From Salpingoeca rosetta (Eukaryota > Protista > Choanoflagellata), in contig JAWQFM010000033.1 in assembly GCA_033442325.1 (NCBI GenBank), positions 413,029 to 477,028 of the forward strand: DNA of 64,000 nucleotides, read 5' to 3'. Numbering within the stretch: position 1 is the stretch's first letter; each line of letters starts with the position of its first letter. Of the stretch, positions 28,420 through 47,210 are shown in pieces. The notes under the pieces are model-generated. The model did not search any database and was not told where the DNA came from. It saw only the letters and a list, made by a program, of their open reading frames with translations. The position numbers were made by a program, and so were the translations under genes.

Positions 28420-31400
28420 TCACCTGCGCTGGGGGTGCCTGCGCGGGCTTGCGCTTCGCTCGCGTCGCTCATCACGCGGGACCGACCAGTACCTGCCACC
28501 ACGGCCCTCACCCTGCAGTACGCTGGACGTTGACGACGATGGTAGTGGCGGTGGTGGTGGTGGTGGTGGCGGTGGGGACGCAGAACGAGAGCGGCGACGC
28601 AGGCGAAGGGGGCTGCCATAGTCGCGGCGGTACGCGTGCGCTCCAGGTGGTGGTGGTGGTGGTGGCGGTGGTGGCGGTGGGGCTGCATCATGCCTGTCGT
28701 CGGCCTTGCGCGGGCGAGCACCATCATCGCCAGTGGGATAGCGGTATGGGGGCGGCGAAAAGCGCCGGCGTTCCAGCCACTCCTCTCTCAGGTCCCAATC
28801 ACGCGGGTCCCTGTCCCTGTCCCTGTCCCAGTCTCTCTCCCGCTCCCTGTCCAGCTCTGCATCTCTGCCGCGCCACCCGCCACCGCGCCTAAACCTGCTG
28901 GTAAAGCGACCGCGGCCACGGCCACGACCGCCCTCGCTGCCGCCACCGCCGCTGCCGCCGCTTGTGGCTGCTGGCGGCGGTGTTCTTCCCGGCGAGAGGG
29001 ACGCTGCGCGGGCCGCTGGGGGCGGGCGGGCGTGTATGCCCTGCCGGCCGTCATCGCGCTGCGGGGACGCAGACGACGAGGGGATGGACGGCGCACGTGG
29101 CGGTGTTGCTGGCGGAGACGCACCGCGTCCAGCGGGGTGCCGTGGGTGGTGGTGGTGGGGGTGGGGGTGGTGGTGCGGAGGAGGGTACGGGTGGTGTGGT
29201 GGGTACGGGCGGCGGTAGGATGGCGGCGGTGGCCCGTACATGGGGTGGTGGTGCGGTGGCGGCCCTGCCGGTGGTGCTGGCCCTGGCGGGCCCGCCAGGC
29301 CTGGTGGTGGGGGGCCTTCTTCCCACCGTCGACCGTCATCGCGAAGCCCTGGCGGTGGCGGCGGCGCGCGCCCATACCGCCGCATGTCTCTCCTGTCCCG
29401 GTCCCACTCCCGATCGCGTTCCCTATCGCTGTCCCTGTCTCTGTCTCGGTCCCAGTCGCGCGGGTCACGCATCAAATCACGTCCCCTTTCACGGTCACGG
29501 TCACGATCACGATCACGATCCCAGCCTGGTCGGTCGTGCATGCGCTCCCAGCCGCCGACACCGCCGCGATCGCCCCAGTCCCGCTCACGCCCACGGTCCC
29601 GCAGATCCCATTCGCGCTCGCGTTCACGCTCACGGTCTCTTTCGTATGGCAGAGGTGGTCCCCCTGGTGGCGGTGGTCCCGGTGGCGGCGGTGGGCCAGA
29701 ATCGCGTCCCCACATGTGGTCACGACCACCATAACGGTCGCGGTCACGGTCACGATCACGGTCACGATCACGTGGCCAGGTGCCGGCCGCCGGGTGCGGT
29801 GGTGGCGGCGGAGATGACGACGACGATGGTGGGCCATTCGTGTCACCAAGCCGACTCCACAGGCGACGGTCATACCCACGGTCACGGTCGCGGTCACGGT
29901 CGCGGTCCTTGTCTCTGTCCCTGTCCCGGGGCCAGTCCCGATCACCACCAGGGCGAGCTGCGGAAGACGCAGAAGTCGTCGAAGTGGACGCAGAGGCCGG
30001 TGGCGGCATGCGGCTGCCGCGCTCACGCTCACGCTCACGATCGCGTCCAGGCTCCAAGTCGCGCATGCTGCGTTCTCTGTCCCTGTCACCACGGTCCCGC
30101 TCTCGGTCAAGCGGTACCTGGTCTCCATCCCTGTCCCTGCTCCTGTCATGAGGTGGCGGCGGTGGCGGCGGTGGAGACATGTTTCTTCGCCAGCGCCGGC
30201 GGCTTCCGCTGCGTGACACACTGCCGCTCCTGCTGCTGGCCCGGCTCGCCCTGCTGCTCCCAGCCCGGCTCGTGCTAGCAGTCGTCGTCGCCGTGGTGGC
30301 CGCCGTGGTGGCCGCAGCAGCAGACGTGGCGGACATGGTGGTCGTGGTGGCAGACCTGTCCTCTGTTGGCGTGTGCGCACGTGAGGGGCGGCGGGAGCGT
30401 GGGCGCGACGATTCCCGCGACGGCCGTCCACTGGACGATGATGCCGTTGATCCCATGCGCCGCCGCCGCTGTCGCCGTTGCTGTTGCTGTTGTTCGCGTT
30501 GGCTTGTGTGCTCCTGCGCGTCTGTGGGCGGAGCTGAGCGCTTCGCGCGCTTGGGCGGCTGTTCGGATCCTGCATCCAGTGAGGGCTGCCGATCCACACC
30601 AGCAGTGTCAGCAGGCACGTCACGCTTGCCAGAGTCAGCAAGGGCCGCTCGCACTGCTGACGGCTGCGACGTTGTTGCAGTGGGTGTCTCGTGTGGCGCC
30701 TCTGTTGCTGTTGCTGCTGTTTCTGCTAGTGCTGGGTTATCAGCAGCAGCGGCAGCAACATCATCATCATCATCATCATCACCGCGACCGGCCTTTGCTG
30801 GTGGCGCCGGCTGCTCCGTGGCAGATGGCGGTGATGGTTGCGCTGCAGATGTTTTGGCTGCTGGTGTGGCTGGTGGTGTTGTTACCTTTGCTGGTGGTGG
30901 TGGTGCTGGTTTGAATTCGTCGTCTGCATTTTCATCATCACCAGCAGCACCGGTGGCAGCAGCATTATCAGCACCGCTGCTTGCAGGCGCCGCAGCACTC
31001 TGCTTGACTTGATCGCCGCCCGCTACCGCTGCTGTCATCGCACCCGCACGTGCGTTTCGTTCCACAGCGGTTGCGCCATCATCACTTGGCGAAGGCGCCC
31101 GCTGTTTCGCGCGCTTTCGTGGCTGCTCACCAGCATCGTCACGACCAGCACGATCAGCACGATCATCACGGTCGCCATCGACATCATACGTGGGCGCAGG
31201 TGCGGTTGCCGTAGTCTTGACAGCAGGCAGGGTCGCGTGCGTTGAGGTGGCAGTGGCCAATGCAGGCTGAGCCGTATGCACGGGCGTGGCTCCGCTCTTC
31301 CGCTGCTGCGGGCTGCTTTCCTGCGCCTTTTCGTCACACTCTTGCTGCACTTTCTGCTGCTGCTGCTGCTCTTGTTGCGCTTCCTGTTGTTGTGCGGCGC

Positions 31401-32180
31401 TTTGCGTCTGCTCAACAACAACATCAGCGCCACCACCTGCTGCTGCTGCAGCTGCTGCTGTTGTGTGGAGTGTCTTGGTCTTTCGTGCAGTTGTCGTGTC
31501 GGCTGTGCCCGTGCCGCTTGCGGTGAACTCATCTTGCTTCTTGGTTTGTTTCACCGCAGCCTGCTTCGCTTCATCAGTCACTAGAGCGGCAGTAGCAGCG
31601 GAAGAAGAAGACAGCGCCTTGGCATCTGCTTCCTGTGTCTTCTCACTTGCCCCTGGCTGCTGCTGCTGCTGCTCCGGCTGCTGCTGCTGCGGCTGCTCTT
31701 CCTGAGGTCGTTTGGTCGACTGCTTGTGCTCCTGTACCTTTGATGCCACCCCAGCCCTGTCGTCCTGTGTGTAAGGGGGCTGTTGCTTCTGCTGCGCCTG
31801 CACCTTCTTGCGTGTCTGTGGCAGCTGCGTCGCTTCTTGCGATTTGGCAGCGACCGGCTGCTGTTCCTTGTTGCCTTCATCACTCACAGGTGGTGGTGCT
31901 GTTGCTCGTGTCGTGTTGCTCGAAGACGCTGGGCCGGCATCACTGCTTGCTTCCTTCGGTGTCACAACAGCACCTGAAGCCGTCTTGGCGTCGTCCTTTG
32001 CAGCACGGGATTGCGGAACAGCCGCAGCCTCAGCCGCCTTTGCCATTGATTTTGGCTTCGCTGCGGTTGGTTTGGGAGTTTGTTTTGGTGTTTTTGTGGA
32101 AGGTTCTGGCTTTGCTGCGGTGGTTGCAGTCGCAGCCGGTGCTGCTGCCTGTGGTGGCTGGGAACTGTCATGCGCTCTGT

Positions 32181-32222
<42 letters not shown>

Positions 32223-32835
32223 CAGGTGTTGTTGTTGTTGTTGTTGCTGCTGTTGTTGCTGTTGGTGTTGTGGATGCAGCAACCGGTGTTGCTGTAGAAG
32301 GCGCAGCGACACCCGTGGTGGCTGAAGACGCTTTCGCAGGCGTCGCAGGCGCCTTTGTAGTTGTGGCAGGCATGGTGGCTGAAGGTGTGCTAGCTGGGGC
32401 AGCCTTTGTGCTAGCTGGGGCAGCCTCTGTGCTAGCTGGGGCAGCCTTTGTGTTCGAAGCTGCACCGCTCCCGTGACTCGTCGCGACCGCTGGAGATGTC
32501 GTCTTTGGTGCTGCCGCTGGCGACTTGGTGGCTGTAGCCGATGCCGTAGCAGATGCAAGCGATGATGATGATGATGATGATGGCGATGGCGATGAAGGTG
32601 GGGTGGGTTTTGAAAGGCCGCGGCGCTTCAGGTAGTCTGCCAGCGACAACTTGCGTTTCCTCCCAGATGCAGGGCTACCACGCGCTGCCGTTGATGCTGG
32701 CGCTGCAGGCGACGACGGTGTCGCTGATTTTGCTGCTGCTGCTGCTGCTGCTGCGTTTGATGGTGTCGGGATCGCCTCTGCCTTCAGCTCCGCAACGCGC
32801 CCGCTCTTGTGTTTCTGGTGGGGGTGGTGGTCTGG

Positions 32836-32930
<95 letters not shown>

Positions 32931-33325
32931 GCAGCAGCATTGGTGACGGCAGCGACGATGGGGAGCTGGGCGCTGCTGGGGAGGAGGATGCCGGTGAGTC
33001 GGGGAGGAACACAGACGACCCCTGTGCCGACAGCGGTGACGACACGCCAGGCGACGTTGCACCGTCCACAATTGATGGTGGTGCAGATGCATTCACCCGC
33101 AGGCCATGCACATTGCGGTGCACAGCCGGTCTGGATGGCATCTGGCTCACCACGGCCCCAGGTGCAACAACATTAGTGGTGGCGGTGGTCGTCGTTGTGG
33201 TTGTGGCACTGCTGCCCGCAGTTATTCCTGAAGCACTCGTTGCTCCTGTTTGTGGTGTCGTGACCAATGGTGCTGCTACGGTCTTGACTCCAAGCATGGG
33301 AGGCTCCTGCTTCACCTGTACAACA

Positions 33326-33361
<36 letters not shown>

Positions 33362-36300
33362 GGTAGTAGTGGTTGTTGATGCTGTTGTAGTTGCTGCTGC
33401 GTGCGAGGTGTCCCAGCAGCGCTTTCGCTCTCGGCTTTGACGCCAGAGTGTGCAGCATCAGGGGCCGTGTCCATGGCCGTCGTCGTGGCTGCTGCTGGTG
33501 CTGCATTCATCGTGCCAGTCACAGCACCATCCTGGCCATCATCACGACCACCATCAGCGGTGGTTGCAGGGTGGGCGGCCTGTACTGTGCGCAGCGATCG
33601 TCGCAACCTCTCCTTGAAGCTGACAAAGGGAACAGGCTGCGCGGCGGGCTCAGCCGTCATGCCAGGCGTTGCACTCTCCTTCGACCACCACCACGACCAC
33701 GACAGCGCCGATGCCGCGGTGCTGCTCGTTGTGCTCGCGTTCGCGTTGTTCGTGTGGGTGTGGGTGGTGGCGCCTGTAGTTCCTGTGGACGATGAGAGTG
33801 TGGTGGTGTTGTTGGTGGTGGTGTTGGTGGCGCTGGCGTCCTGGGCGCTGTTGCGGCGTGTGCTGGTGCTGCTGTTGCTGACGCAGTCGTCGTTGTCGTT
33901 GTCGTTGTCGTCGTCACCCAAACGCGATGGGCCAACACCGCCACAGTTCGGGCTGGACCTGCTGCCGTCAATCGCAAACCGCACCCTGCGCGCCGCCTCC
34001 CCGTCGCCACCCGCGTTGGCGGTTGTGCTGGAATGAGCGTTGGTCTTTGCGTTGGGCGCTGCGTTAGTGGAGGGGTTGCTTGCCATCTTCGCTTGCTGCC
34101 CATGGCTCTGTTGCTGAGGATGCGTTGTTGACGGTGTTGTTGTTGTTGTTGGTGTCATTGGGGCTGTGGCGGCTGCTGTTGATGCTACGGGGGTGGTTGA
34201 GGGTGTGAGGTCGTCCGTGTCGAGACTCGGCACACACTCCGGCATCCACTGGCTCATGTACTTCTTGCGAGCATACACCCCGCCCTGCGGAGCGCGTTCA
34301 AAGGCGACGGCCACCACACGGCCAACGTGCGGGCTGCTGTACTCAAATGGCCGCGCAGCCTTGCTGATGCGCCCCTTCAGCCCTTGGAACAGCAGCTGCG
34401 TACATGGTGGTGGTGGTGGGCGTGGTGAGTTTGGCGAGTTTGGGGAGCTAGTGAGGAACAGGAAGCACAGCGTGTAGGCGAGTAAACTTGTGATTATAGG
34501 GGCAAAGGGCTGGAACACACGCGCGCGCGCGCGTTCGTTCAACGTCCATGAAAAATGCACAGGTAAGACGAAGCAAGTCAGCGAGCAACGTACATCAGAG
34601 AGAATTTCGCAAGCGTCGTTGTGGTAGGCGGCAAACGGGGTCTGGCTGGCGCTGCTGATGGTGTTGTAGTTCTCCAGCTCCTCCTTATGCGGGGTGCTGT
34701 TGCGGCGGCGACGGCTACGACGACCAACACCCCCACCACCGCCGCCACTTCGCCCGTGCGGGGGGTCGGGGAAGGCATCCATCGCCCGCGCGTCGTAGTT
34801 GTACCCGGGCGTTAGTGCTGATGCTGACGCCGATGCGGAGATGAGGGAGGGCGAAGAGGGCAGGCGACCAGCAGCATCAGCCAGCGGGTTCATCTGCAGA
34901 TGCAGTGACGCAGGCCGACGCCCTTTCGTGCCGCCGCTGTACCATCGACACAATGGGAACGGGGGAGGTGGTTGTAGGTGGAGGAGGTGGTTGTAGGTGG
35001 AGGTGGAGGCGGTGGAGGAGGTGGTTGTAGGTGGTTGGGAGGGGCGTGAGGTCAGCTGTGAGTGGCTTGCATGCCGTACGCAATCGAACGATGTGCCCAT
35101 GCATTCAGCCAATGTGCGCGCAAGCATGTGTTTGTGCATGTGTGTGTACGTGCATGAACATGCACGTTACCTTGCAGGCTTTGCGGAGGATGCTCTGCGG
35201 CCCTTTCCGCCGCTCGACCGGCGCCCCTCCGACGCCCGCGCTTCAGAACCGCCTTCAGCAGCAGCAGCAAGCAGCAGCCATCATGCAGGACACACGTGAT
35301 GATAATGACGGTGGTGGTGGTGGTGGTGGTGGTGGTGGTGAGGGAGGTAGGTGAGGGTGGTGGGGGTGAAATGAGTAATGCAAGAGTTCAGTGCATGTTC
35401 ACATACCACACGTACACGCACAATCCAATACACATGAACACCATGGGTGCGCACCTGCCGGTGTGTGCTGTTGCTGCTGCTGCTTTGCCACCTCACCACA
35501 CGCCTCATCGATGCGTCTGAGAGACATCATGAGCTTGCGCTCCTCGCGTGACATGCGGGCAGTCGGCGTGCCTGCTGGTGATTCAGGCACAGACGACACC
35601 TGAACCAGCGCAAATACGTGGTGGGGGTGGGTGATTGTGTAAGTGAGCAGGTTGGGGTTGGGATTGGAGGTTTACGGTGTGAGTGCATGGCGAGGGAGCA
35701 GCAGTGCTGTGTAACTGTCGGCAATCATGACATCAATCATGACAGCACCCTCCATCCAACCCCTCCCACATCCCGTCCACGCCCCTCCCCCATCTCTCCA
35801 CGAGACACTTTCAAGTGTGCCAAACGCACTGATTTTGACTGCTGCTTCGGCTGCTTTGGCTGCTTGGGTTGCTTCGGCTGTCGCTGTTGCTTCGGCTGTG
35901 GGCGGCGTGGTCCCTTTGCAGCCAACGACCGCTGCCGCCGCTTCATCGCTTTCGCGACTGGCGGCAAGAGAGACGGTGATGGTGGCGGTGGGGTAGGTTG
36001 GTGACGGTGAAAGTGGGGATTACATTCAGGGACAAAGGCAAGCCATGAATGAACACGCACACTTGCACACTCACTCAAACACGCACACACACACGCACAC
36101 ACACACACGCGCACACACGCACACGCACACGCACACACACACACGCGCACACACGCACACGCACACACGCACACACACACACCGTCCACACAGCGACCGC
36201 CATTGTTGCTGCTGTACCTTGGCAGAGGGAGGAGCCGCATGCGCAGTCGAGGAGGTAGGAGACGGACGCCCAGTCCACATCAAAGGGGATGGTCACCTCC

Positions 36301-38177
36301 GCGCCCTTGGGCAGATTGCGTGATGCCGTAAGGGCAAGGGCCAGGCGGCCGCGGGCCTGGAACACGCCCAGCGACGCCGACGCATCGCACGCCCGCCGCA
36401 CATAGCGCGCAATAGACCCTCGCGTGCTGAGAAACGGAAGGAGGGGGGAAGGGAGGGAGGGAGATTGGGGAAGGGATGCAAAGAAAGGTATTGGAGGCAG
36501 AGTGTGGACCCATCACGAGCACAGGGTGAGAAGACAGCTTGTGCAACAAGCTTAGTGGCATCGACAGAAACACACGCACACACACACATACACACATACA
36601 CACACACGCACACACACATATACACACACATACACACACGCATACACACACATACACACACGCATACATGCAGACATGCACACACACACACACGCACGCT
36701 GCCGCCAAGCTCACGTGGCGTCGACAGCCAGGGAGAGGCCGGCCGTGTCGAAGAAGATAACATAGGGGAGAAACGTGTCCTCCAACTTGTACTGCTTGGC
36801 TAACTCCGAGCGCAGGCACAAGCGGCCAGATACAACCGTGATTGGCGCCCCCTTTGGCACGTCCTCTTGCACAAACAGCGCCTGCAGGCAGGCAGCCAGG
36901 CAGGCAGCCAGGCAGACAGCAGCAAAAGCGAGACGCGCGCGGTTGAGTTGGTGGTGGTTACGTTTGTGGTTGTGACGGTGTGCAGAAAGCAAGCCAGTGG
37001 AAGGAGTGTTGCAGAAACGACAGCAGCCCATGTGAGTGCACAGGATTCAACGTGTATGAGCGCACCTGTTTGCCGGAGACAATGGTGTGATGTTGGACAA
37101 CGTGGTGGTCCTGGTCCTTGATAAACTCTGTGATGTCATCCAGCTGATTAATCTCGATGTTCTTCGCAACGGCCGCTTTGGCGGGTGCTCTGCAAAACGC
37201 AAGTGCAACACGGGCGAGGGCGTGAGAGTTGGAGATGGCGGGAATTCGGTGGGCTTGTGCTCCGAATTCATGTCACATATTGACGGGAAGTGGTGTGTTT
37301 GCGTGTGTTCGCATGTGTTAATGTGTGTTTGCGTGTGCTGTGCGCACAGGTACGAGTGAAGTTGAGCATGTGCAGGTTGTGTTGCTGTTGTTGTTGCGAG
37401 GAGTGACGTACGAGAGCTCGAGGACATTTGTTTCTTGGAAGGGCGTTGCCTGGATGGGCTCTGGCAACGGCATGCGCTTTCGTCGCCGCGCCAGCGCACG
37501 CGCCTTCTTGTCCTGGATTCGCATGGCCCGCAGCATGTCCACTTGCCTGTCGAATGATGCACGAGGAAGTCGTTGTGGAGAGCAAGGGTCGACACGAGCG
37601 AGGTGAACACGTTGTGTTGGCAGAAGGAGTGAAAAGGTGGCAGGTCGACATGGAGGGAGAACACCGCAAAGGGGGTGGGCGGGACACCGTGCAGCAAAAC
37701 AGAAACAGCAGCACCGTGTTGCAGAGATGCAGCCACACAGAGGCCACAACAGCACAGACAGCACAGGACGCACGACACAAGGAACGTACAAACACAAATC
37801 ACACACAACACACACACACACACACAACACAACACACGATGTACATATGCACGCAACACACGACGTTCACATGAACACAACACAACACACACACACACAC
37901 ACACACACAAAACACGACGTTCACATGAACACAACACAACACACACACACACACAAAACACGACGTACATATGTACAGACCTTGGCTTGCACCTCTCGCA
38001 GAGGTAGACCTCGGGGATATCATCTGTGTCGATGTCTTCGAAGCAGGCAATGTGCTGCCAGACGTTGCACGAGTCGCAGCACACCATGGACTCATCATTG
38101 TGACGGTAGCAGCACACGCACCGCGTCTCACCAACGTCGCCGCTGCTGTCTGAGCGCGATGCACGCCCCGATGACAT
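28420..38177 (-). CDS. MLL5/SETD5/UpSET/Set3-family PHD finger + degenerate SET domain protein with long low-complexity and RD/RE-rich tail
   Basis: [31 protein letters not shown]...YLCERCKPR; SET VDAT...IARYVRRAC...[10 protein letters not shown]...DCAC; family motifs SREERKL and [10 protein letters not shown]. The true stop may lie beyond 28420 if a donor near 28422 or 28512 is used. Confidence 0.85.
32389..32452 (-). repeat. 21-bp coding minisatellite (KAAPAST-like, 3 copies) in the PHD-SET protein
   Basis: GCTAGCTGGGGCAGCCTYTGT repeated. Confidence 0.85.
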
Positions 38178-38461
38178 GGTGTGCTGTGTCGAGACAGCGA
38201 CAACCTACAGCTGTACGTATGTCGAAGGTGTGGCTTGCCTCTTGTCGTTCTGGCTGAGCATTGACAACCCCAAGCAACTGTTGTTGAGGCAAGCGTGGCT
38301 GCGTGGAGGGTGGTTGGCGCTGCTGGTGTTGGTGTTGTGTGTTGTGTGCGAACGCGCCAGCCGAGCGCTTTGCTTGGTCTGAAGGGTGCGAGTGGGGAAA
38401 AATGACCGTGACTTTGCACGAAATCCCCCAAGCAGCTGTGAGGCTGGCAAAAAAAAAGGTG

Positions 38462-38533
38462 AGGCCACGGAGAGGATCGAACTCCCATTTTGAGATTCAG
38501 AGTCTCATGTACTAGCCATTATACTACGCGGCC
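38462..38533 (-). tRNA. tRNA-Gln (anticodon CTG)
   Basis: 72-nt cloverleaf: acceptor GGCCGCG/CGTGGCC, D stem GTAT/GTAC, anticodon arm TGAGA-CTCTGAA-TCTCA, T loop TTCGATC; downstream oligo-T Pol III terminator. Confidence 0.95.
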
Positions 38534-38601
38534 GTCATCTTGATGGTATATGAGGAGAATTTTACATATTTCAAATAATGTTGCAGAAGCTGGCTGCGTT
38601 G

Positions 38602-38657
38602 TTGCTGTGCTTGCTGTGCTTGCTGTGCTTGCTGTGCTTGCTGTGCTTGCTGTGCTT
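38602..38657. repeat. 9-bp tandem repeat (GCTGTGCTT)x6 between the tRNA genes
   Basis: Read directly from the sequence. Confidence 0.9.
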
Positions 38658-38872
38658 GGGGCGTAGGAATGCCCGCAGCGAACTCGCGAAGAAGTATTGC
38701 AAGCACCGTGCTCAAAGGTGCAGTGGATGTGTCTGTGCGAGGACACAACACACTTGCAGAACTCCAGCTCCCACTGTTGCAAATCACACACAGACTCTCT
38801 TCGCTACTATCGTGTCTATGATGTCATTTTGGCCGCAGCCGTCACAGAAGTCCAGCGGACCCGAATGTAAGC

Positions 38873-38944
38873 GGCGACATAGTATAATGGCTAGTACATG
38901 AGACTCTGAATCTCAAAATGGGAGTTCGATCCTCTCTGTTGCCT
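38873..38944 (+). tRNA. tRNA-Gln (anticodon CTG), G4:U69 isodecoder
   Basis: 72-nt cloverleaf with acceptor GGCGACA/TGTTGCC; the rest is identical to the minus-strand copy; T-run terminator immediately downstream. Confidence 0.95.
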
Positions 38945-38970
38945 TTCTTTTTTTCTTTTTTTTTCTTCCT
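38945..38970 (+). terminator. RNA Pol III oligo-T terminator
   Basis: Two runs of >=7 T directly after the tRNA. Confidence 0.8.
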
Positions 38971-39331
38971 CCAGCCTTGTTCTTTCAACGTACGGGACAG
39001 TTGTTGGAAGGCACAGCAGATTTTCACACACCCCGTTCATACAATGCCAGGCAGCAGCTTCGTCAATTTCAGTCGTGCAGTTTTCCCATCCGCTGCTGTG
39101 TGTCAGGGTGAAGGTGGTTCTTCTTCGTCGTTGACTTGACCTGGTGCTCTCAGCTTGTGTTGTAGCACTTCTCAATCACGCAGGCAACGCATACGAAGCC
39201 ATACACTCGCACGCACGCACACACACACACAGCACACACACACACACGCACGCTTCCACATCTTACAATCGTCCATATTCTCATTCCCGAGACAGCAACA
39301 TCAAACCATTGCCCCAACAAAGTCGAGAAGC

Positions 39332-47210
<7,879 letters not shown>

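What the first reader, a model, noticed from the sequence alone, without database searches (positions are those of the whole stretch)
38873..38944. tRNA-Gln(CUG) isodecoder carrying G4:U69, a known alanyl-tRNA synthetase mischarging determinant
Seen: acceptor pairs G1-C72, G2-C71, C3-G70, G4:U69, A5-U68, C6-G67, A7-U66, discriminator U73; the neighbouring copy has C4-G69 and G5:U68 instead. Known: eukaryotic AlaRS can alanylate non-cognate tRNAs with G4:U69 (tRNA-Cys, tRNA-Thr), and the ATD deacylase proofreads Ala-tRNA-Thr(G4:U69). Inference: this isodecoder could insert Ala at CAG codons, or need a trans-editing factor, in a proteome rich in polyQ tracts (three neighbouring genes have CAG/CAA runs).
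Basis: partly seen in the sequence, partly recalled or inferred. Interest (0 to 1): 0.75.

Follow-up and report, generated by a model that had tools for sequence, protein, structure and literature searches.

The report
Known G4:U69 glutamine tRNA gene
This is a real glutamine tRNA gene of a choanoflagellate (almost certainly Salpingoeca rosetta) carrying a G4:U69 wobble pair that lets the alanine-charging enzyme mis-load it weakly. That fact, and the matching proofreading enzyme ATD, were already published in 2020.

Summary
Window 38873-38944 (+) is a 72-nt tRNA-Gln(CUG) with acceptor pairs G1-C72, G2-C71, C3-G70, G4:U69, A5-U68, C6-G67, A7-U66 and discriminator U73. The neighbour at 38462-38533 (-) has an identical body but C4-G69 and G5:U68. 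Contigs from independent studies carry both letters, G4 in three studies and U69 in two, so it is not an assembly error.

It is not an odd one-off. The genome has four tRNA-Gln genes, and the only tRNA-Gln(UUG) gene also has G4:U69, as do all three tRNA-His genes. No tRNA-Thr has it, including the circularly permuted Thr(AGU).

The genome encodes one AlaRS, a canonical DTD, and an ATD with the mixed PQATL/NDGPFT motifs.

These features match what Kuncha et al. 2020 (eLife, PMC7302879) published for Salpingoeca rosetta. That paper also reports AlaRS charging tRNA-Gln(G4:U69) to 4-7% in vitro, and an active S. rosetta ATD. Ala insertion at Gln codons in vivo remains unshown.

Seen in passing and more interesting: a single-copy class-I tRNA with a full alanine identity set (G3:U70, A73) and a UAA (Leu) anticodon.

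The parts
38873..38944 (+). tRNA-Gln(CUG) gene, isodecoder 1, 72 nt. G4 is at 38876, U69 at 38940, the anticodon at 38906-38908 and discriminator U73 at 38944.
   Evidence: ARAGORN. Rfam RF00005 63.3 bits. The cloverleaf equals the minimum-free-energy fold at -18.6 kcal/mol. Independent contigs agree.
38880..38890 (+). Internal Pol III A-box region (tRNA positions 8-19, TAGTATAATGG). It is identical in all three CUG genes.
   Evidence: Read from the sequence. The comparison with the A-box consensus is from general knowledge and was not tested.
38924..38934 (+). Internal Pol III B-box region (last T-stem base, the T loop and the start of the 3' T stem, G-TTCGATC-CTC).
   Evidence: Read from the sequence. 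Function is inferred.
38945..38964 (+). Pol III terminator-like T runs (T7 at 38948-38954 and T9 at 38956-38964), starting 4 nt after the gene.
   Evidence: Sequence. All four tRNA-Gln genes have a T run of at least 9 within 7 nt of their 3' end, or T7 plus T9 here.
38462..38533 (-). Neighbouring tRNA-Gln(CUG) gene, isodecoder 2 (C4-G69, G5:U68, G7-C66). It is transcribed divergently, with 339 bp between the two 5' ends. A T9 terminator lies at 38449-38457.
   Evidence: An identical third copy lies at G000:C2:1475897-1475968.

Best explanation
This is a working, Pol III-transcribed gene for cytosolic tRNA-Gln(CUG) of a choanoflagellate, almost certainly Salpingoeca rosetta. It is one of four tRNA-Gln genes. 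It and the single tRNA-Gln(UUG) gene carry C3-G70/G4:U69 in the acceptor stem.

The tRNA is charged by GlnRS and reads CAG. Because eukaryotic AlaRS tolerates a G:U pair shifted from 3:70 to 4:69, the tRNA is also a weak off-target for AlaRS; 4-7% charging in vitro has been published.

In the cell the small amount of Ala-tRNA-Gln is probably kept out of translation in two ways. One is competition from GlnRS. The other is the trans-editing deacylase ATD encoded in the same genome. GlnRS has no editing domain, so ATD is the only obvious proofreader.

Shown here: the gene, its fold, its paralogues, the presence of AlaRS, DTD and ATD, and support from independent assemblies. Taken from the literature: alanylation and ATD activity on Ala-tRNA-Thr. 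Inferred: expression, the GlnRS/AlaRS competition, and ATD acting on Ala-tRNA-Gln.
For: - The tRNA calls and the exact acceptor pairs come.
- The cloverleaf is the minimum-free-energy structure, and a T7/T9 terminator follows the gene.
- The five differences from the sister copies all lie in the acceptor stem and all keep pairing. The 4:69 and 7:66 pairs changed on both sides and 5:68 on one side, while the 58-nt body has no change. If five changes fell at random, all landing in 14 of 72 positions has probability about 3e-4. This argues for selection on a functional stem.
- The full tRNA-Gln set is four genes, by BLAST and a pattern scan. The only UUG gene is also G4:U69, and it alone reads CAA. 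CAA is about 31% of Gln codons in 10 long open frames (169 CAA against 382 CAG).
- All three tRNA-His genes have G4:U69. Thr(CGU), Thr(UGU) and the permuted Thr(AGU) do not.
- ATD exons carrying PQATL and NDGPFT were found, and their best solved relative is mouse ATD 5XAQ (E 1.3e-6). A canonical DTD (SQFTL/NDGPVT) and one AlaRS locus are also present.
- These features match Kuncha et al. 2020 for S. rosetta, including the 4-7% alanylation.
- Contigs of independent studies support the letters: G4 in three, U69 in two.
Against: - There is no RNA evidence for this gene. The runs guessed to be RNA did not cover it, and ordinary RNA-seq loses tRNAs.
- The published alanylation does not say which tRNA-Gln isoacceptor was used. 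The paper's methods name only mouse AlaRS, so the host enzyme is untested.
- Deacylation of Ala-tRNA-Gln by ATD was explicitly not achieved in that paper.
- The species name is inferred. The grounds are the 55.4-Mb genome, the matching ATD motifs and G4:U69 pattern, and notes by other agents in this scan. No named record was seen.
- My tRNA census is partial: 63 of 498 candidates were scored.
Confidence: 0.85

Rival explanations
1. G4:U69 is a selected feature of this lineage's tRNA-Gln. It might be part of what its GlnRS recognises, or a device for low-level regulated Gln-to-Ala ambiguity at CAA/CAG (for example in the many polyQ tracts), tuned by ATD activity.
For: The pair occurs in two otherwise only about 65% identical tRNA-Gln families: CUG-1 and UUG match at 47 of 72 bases but share pairs 1-4. 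The sole CAA reader has it. None of 36 environmental tRNA-Gln genes with the same D arm has it; all have U3-A70. Long CAA/CAG-coded polyQ tracts lie next door.
Against: Two of the three CUG genes do without it, so GlnRS does not need it. In vitro alanylation is weak at 4-7%. [quoted passage not shown] No proteomic or expression data exist here.
Confidence: 0.08
2. The copy is a silent or decaying duplicate that contributes nothing to translation, so its G4:U69 has no consequence.
For: It is a single copy against two copies of the other isodecoder. Its acceptor stem is weaker, with three A-U pairs and a fold energy of -18.6 against -21.5 kcal/mol. No transcript evidence was found.
Against: It has a perfect cloverleaf, a body identical to the sister genes, changes that all keep pairing, and a strong T7/T9 terminator. 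Even if this copy were silent, the single tRNA-Gln(UUG) gene carries the same pair and cannot be silent.
Confidence: 0.06
3. G4 or U69 is an assembly or sequencing error.
For: None found. One run (X14) shows T>G at 38925 in a contig 31 nt from its end, which shows that the unitig ends in this repeated tRNA body are not fully clean.
Against: Contigs from three independent studies contain G4 with unique upstream flank, and contigs from two contain U69 with unique downstream flank, with no differences at those places. A further public contig (L119) agrees on G4.
Confidence: 0.01

Closest known systems
S. rosetta tRNA-Gln(G4:U69) as described by Kuncha et al. 2020 (eLife 9:e58118, PMC7302879)
   Same: Most likely the very same molecule or its UUG sister. 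[quoted passage not shown]
   Different: The paper does not give gene coordinates, copy numbers or the isoacceptor. New here: two of the four Gln genes carry the pair, including the only UUG gene. The hidden, permuted tRNA-Thr(AGU) also lacks G4:U69. The paper's methods name only mouse AlaRS.
Vertebrate tRNA-Thr(AGU/CGU) with G4:U69 (Sun et al. 2016; Chen et al. 2020, PMC7337962; Kuncha et al. 2018, PMC5802732)
   Same: Same C3-G70/G4:U69 acceptor context and same off-target enzyme (AlaRS). It is also proofread by ATD.
   Different: Different amino-acid identity. ThrRS has an editing domain that cross-edits Ala-tRNA-Thr, whereas GlnRS has none (general knowledge). Alanylation of tRNA-Gln is 5-8 fold lower than for tRNA-Thr, at 4-7% against 30-40%.
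tRNA-Ala with the G3:U70 identity pair
   Same: A G:U wobble in the acceptor stem next to G1-C72 and G2-C71 is what AlaRS reads.
   Different: The wobble is one step lower. The discriminator is U73, not A73. The body and anticodon are those of tRNA-Gln. This genome's own tRNA-Ala genes are GGGCCCA/UGGGUCC with A73.

Membership tests
Cytosolic tRNA-Gln (class I tRNA, anticodon YUG) | Canonical cloverleaf scoring above the Rfam tRNA threshold | tested here: met
   RF00005 63.3 bits against a gathering score of 29. The cloverleaf equals the minimum-free-energy fold.
Cytosolic tRNA-Gln (class I tRNA, anticodon YUG) | Anticodon CUG or UUG in a 7-nt loop with U33 | tested here: met
   Loop CUCUGAA at 38904-38910.
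Cytosolic tRNA-Gln (class I tRNA, anticodon YUG) | Body and discriminator like other eukaryotic tRNA-Gln | tested here: met
   The D arm and anticodon loop are shared with 36 environmental tRNA-Gln genes, most with U73. The body is identical to two sister genes.
Cytosolic tRNA-Gln (class I tRNA, anticodon YUG) | Aminoacylated by GlnRS | not testable with these tools
   Needs an enzyme assay.
G4:U69 non-alanine tRNAs mischarged by eukaryotic AlaRS | G at position 4 paired with U at position 69 | tested here: met
   38876 G and 38940 T, confirmed in independent contigs.
G4:U69 non-alanine tRNAs mischarged by eukaryotic AlaRS | Acceptor context as in proven substrates (C3-G70 above the wobble) | tested here: met
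   C3-G70 here. Human tRNA-Thr substrates have 'original C3:G70 and G4:U69' (PMC7337962).
G4:U69 non-alanine tRNAs mischarged by eukaryotic AlaRS | Measurable alanylation by AlaRS | not testable with these tools
   Published as 4-7% for S. rosetta tRNA-Gln(G4:U69), isoacceptor not stated and enzyme apparently mouse AlaRS. One AlaRS locus exists at G000:C35:238192-241284.
Substrates of the ATD trans-editing deacylase | ATD encoded in the same genome | tested here: met
   L069 exons at 785-886, 1495-1626, 1973-2050 and 2440-2520 carry PQATL and NDGPFT. The best solved relative is mouse ATD 5XAQ.
Substrates of the ATD trans-editing deacylase | Ala-tRNA-Gln deacylated by ATD | not testable with these tools
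   Also not achieved in the literature, because too little substrate could be made.
tRNA pseudogene | Broken stems, a diverged body or a missing terminator | tested here: not met
   All stems pair, the body is identical to its sisters, and a T7/T9 run follows the gene.

The most novel reading that the evidence does not exclude
G4:U69 is kept on purpose in this lineage's tRNA-Gln, in both isoacceptor families and in the only CAA reader. Ala-tRNA-Gln, not Ala-tRNA-Thr, would then be the original substrate for which ATD arose before animals. ATD activity (for example under stress) would set a tunable low level of Gln-to-Ala ambiguity in a polyQ-rich proteome.
Probability: 0.07. Interest if true: 0.6.

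Novelty: already known. Interest (0 to 1): 0.22.

Why it matters
The case bears on how translation quality control (ATD) arose just before animals. In this close relative of animals, the tRNAs that could be mis-loaded with alanine are glutamine and histidine tRNAs, not the threonine tRNAs of animals.

That story is already in print. This check adds five things:
- the gene-level map;
- the point that the only CAA-reading tRNA carries the risky pair, so the cell cannot avoid it;
- the point that the hidden permuted tRNA-Thr(AGU) really lacks it, which closes a loophole in the published claim;
- the host AlaRS has not been tested;
- ATD has not been tested on Ala-tRNA-Gln.

Tried and rejected
- **Whole-genome tRNA census.** The RF00005 search scored only 63 of 498 candidates, so "only Gln and His" rests on the paper plus my partial set.
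- **BLAST with tRNA-Leu(CAA)** to find Leu paralogues found only itself.
I did not try to read more genome by other means.
- **TTA-containing open frames in DNA already held.** Four were scanned against Pfam and none hit a family. The rest look like read-through introns or microsatellites. No codon-level test of TTA was therefore possible.
- **Kinase HRDxKPxN motif scan.** It gave 51 sites and no TTA. About 0.3 were expected, so this is uninformative.
- **First pattern for the permuted tRNA-Thr** found nothing. A looser one worked.
- **Sun et al. 2016** (PMC5356932) is not held, so it is cited only through reviews.
- **RNA evidence.** No listed run is on record as RNA, and the one guessed RNA run laid did not cover the tRNA. 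This says nothing about expression.
- **Species name.** The tools hide it, so it is inferred.

Full report
**What is there.** ARAGORN finds two tRNA genes in the window, both tRNA-Gln(CUG). One is at 38873-38944 (+) and one at 38461/2-38533 (-). Rfam's tRNA model scores them 63.3 and 62.7 bits against a threshold of 29.

Read directly from the sequence, the plus-strand gene has acceptor strands GGCGACA and UGUUGCC. The minus-strand neighbour has GGCCGCG and CGUGGCC, giving C4-G69, G5:U68 and G7-C66.

The two genes face away from each other with 339 bp between their 5' ends. Each is followed by a run of T: T7 plus T9 for the plus-strand gene and T9 for the neighbour. Both fold into the cloverleaf as their minimum-energy structure, at -18.6 and -21.5 kcal/mol.

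**Is it an error?** No. Contigs assembled from three independent studies each hold a 281-nt piece covering 38629-38909 without a difference, which includes G4 and unique upstream flank. Two of them hold pieces across U69 and unique downstream flank. A public metagenome-collection contig is 100% identical to window 37908-38936. None of the laid runs gives RNA evidence for the tRNA, as expected for ordinary libraries.

**The gene family.** The window's genome (G000) has 55.4 Mb in 68 contigs. BLAST with each tRNA-Gln, plus a pattern scan for any YUG anticodon loop at the right distance from a T loop, gives four tRNA-Gln genes and three chance hits that are not tRNAs. The four genes are:
- the G4:U69 CUG gene in the window;
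- the neighbouring C4-G69 CUG gene in the window;
- a third CUG gene at C2:1475897-1475968, identical to the neighbour;
- a single tRNA-Gln(UUG) gene at C1:1526578-1526649.

The UUG gene has acceptor GGCGGUA/UACUGCC, that is G1-C72, G2-C71, C3-G70 and G4:U69 again. So the pair is not a quirk of one isodecoder. The only tRNA able to read CAA has it. CAA makes up about 31% of Gln codons in ten long open frames (169 CAA against 382 CAG).

The CUG isodecoders differ at five positions. All five lie in the acceptor stem and all keep pairing: two pairs changed on both sides and one on one side. The 58-nt body has no change. That pattern is what selection on two working genes would give, not decay.

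**Other G4:U69 tRNAs.** In my partial census G4:U69 occurs only in tRNA-Gln and in all three tRNA-His genes. tRNA-Thr(CGU) and tRNA-Thr(UGU) have U4:G69. tRNA-Cys and tRNA-Ala do not have G4:U69.

Notes from other agents of this scan say that this genome's tRNA-Thr(AGU) is circularly permuted and therefore missed by standard tools. I located it with a pattern: three copies at C2:1298527-1298595, C2:1311323-1311391 and C23:274270-274340. Its acceptor is GGGCUCG/CGGGCCC, giving C4-G69 and U5:G68. The hidden Thr(AGU) therefore also lacks G4:U69.

**The enzymes.** Pfam Tyr_Deacylase finds a strong two-exon gene on C14 and a weak hit on C24.
- The C14 gene has SQFTL and NDGPVT, which are the DTD motifs.
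- The C24 gene has PQATL and NDGPFT. I traced four exons. Searched one by one, two of them find mouse ATD (5XAQ) as the best solved relative, at E 1.3e-6 and 0.03.
- One AlaRS locus lies on C35.

**Prior knowledge.** Kuncha et al. 2020 (eLife, PMC7302879) state the following for Salpingoeca rosetta:
- The choanoflagellate ATD is a transitional form with PQATL and NDGPFT beside a canonical DTD.
- S. rosetta ATD deacylates Ala-tRNA-Thr.
- tRNA-Gln(G4:U69) is charged by AlaRS to 4-7%, against 30-40% for tRNA-Thr(G4:U69).
- Too little Ala-tRNA-Gln could be made to test deacylation.

Every genomic feature I checked matches. Together with the genome size and the other agents' notes, I take the organism to be S. 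rosetta; this is an inference, about 90% sure.

The last paper also shows that human substrates have the same C3-G70/G4:U69 context, and that U4:G69 is not mischarged.

A search for later work on this point found none.

**Relatives.** A scan of public metagenome contigs for tRNA-Gln genes with the same D arm and anticodon loop returned 37 contigs. Of their 36 recognisable tRNA-Gln genes, 35 have U3-A70 and none has G4:U69. The remaining one is the contig that is the window's own locus, which carries the C4-G69 copy. The taxa are unknown, so this is only a rough baseline. It suggests that C3-G70 with G4:U69 is special to this lineage.

**How it most likely works.**
- The gene is transcribed by Pol III from its internal A and B boxes and ends at the T runs. 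This is inferred.
- GlnRS charges the tRNA and it reads CAG. This is inferred from its tRNA-Gln identity.
- AlaRS occasionally accepts it because the G:U pair sits one step below the canonical 3:70 position. This is published in vitro, though the paper's methods name only mouse AlaRS.
- ATD, the only editing factor likely to act since GlnRS has no editing domain, removes the alanine. This is inferred and untested.
- Whether any Ala reaches Gln codons in vivo is unknown. In mammalian cells no Thr-to-Ala change was found even from much better substrates.

**Seen in passing.** The best-scoring tRNA of the genome (71.9 bits, C11:132321-132392, single copy) is a 72-nt class-I tRNA.
- Its acceptor is GGGCCCU/AGGGUCC with G3:U70 and A73, and its D arm is almost identical to the genome's tRNA-Ala.
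- Its anticodon is UAA, which reads the Leu codon UUA.
- Two pattern scans found no ordinary long-arm tRNA-Leu(UAA). The second design does find Leu(CAG), Leu(UAG) and Leu(CAA).
- TTA is the rarest sense codon in long open frames, at 0.63 per 1000.

This looks like the tRNA-Ala(CAG) that recodes CUG in Pachysolen (PMC4937558). It could mean Ala at UUA codons.

The caveat is serious. This genome hides tRNA genes in odd formats, and tRNA-Leu(AAG) also escaped my scans. It is a lead, not a finding.

Noticed in passing
G000:C11:132321-132392 (+), which is L004:1501-1572: A single-copy 72-nt class-I tRNA, the best Rfam tRNA score in the genome (71.9 bits). It has a full alanine identity set: G1-C72, G2-C71, G3:U70, A73, and an acceptor and D arm nearly identical to this genome's tRNA-Ala. 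Its anticodon is UAA, which reads the Leu codon UUA. No ordinary long-arm tRNA-Leu(UAA) was found by two pattern scans, and TTA is the rarest sense codon (0.63 per 1000). The first T5 run lies about 40 nt downstream. It is a candidate UUA-to-Ala decoder, comparable to Pachysolen CUG-Ala, or a natural mistranslating tRNA. Caveat: this genome hides tRNA genes (permuted or with odd introns), and tRNA-Leu(AAG) also escaped my scans.
   Followed up: partly
G000:C6 (L083:1471-1541) and G000:C15 (L092:1489-1559 minus strand, L093:1471-1541): All three tRNA-His(GUG) genes carry G4:U69. Two isodecoders differ at 5:68 (C-G against U-A). This matches the published statement for S. rosetta.
   Followed up: yes
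G000:C2:1298527-1298595 (-), C2:1311323-1311391 (+), C23:274270-274340 (-): Three copies of a circularly permuted tRNA-Thr(AGU). The order is T arm and 3' acceptor strand, a 10-12 nt linker, then the 5' acceptor strand through the anticodon. The acceptor has C4-G69 and U5:G68, so there is no G4:U69. This confirms, for these parts, the earlier scan notes on a permuted Thr gene.
   Followed up: partly
window 38602-38658: A perfect 9-mer tandem repeat (TTGCTGTGC x6.3) sits in the 339-bp spacer between the two divergent tRNA-Gln genes. Contigs in all four laid runs include a form lacking 3 nt at 38617, so repeat-length or sequence variants exist.
   Followed up: no
window 39509-39629 (+) and 32835-32931 (-): Long polyQ tracts lie next to the tRNA genes. 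One is about 40 Gln (CAA x21.7 then CAG x19) in the open frame 39140-40813. The other is 32 CAA codons in the minus-strand ORF 28420-35139. The CAA-coded parts depend wholly on the single G4:U69 tRNA-Gln(UUG).
   Followed up: partly
G000:C4:2362482-2362556 (L019:1501-1576): One tRNA-Lys(CUU) gene in a cluster of identical copies has a C4-A69 mismatch in the acceptor stem, where the others have U4-A69.
   Followed up: no
G000:C2:1473703-1473743 (-); genome-wide scans: Only six long-arm tRNAs share the usual GGCCGAGTGGT D arm: Leu-UAG, Leu-CAA, Ser-AGA x3 and Ser-UGA. Leu(CAG) has a different D arm. No tRNA-Leu(AAG) was found although CTC is a common codon. More hidden or unusual tRNA genes are likely.
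   Followed up: partly
window 38925: One run (X14) has a contig with G instead of T at T54 of the tRNA, 31 nt from the contig end. This is probably a unitig-end artefact in the repeated tRNA body, and the other runs do not show it.
   Followed up: no
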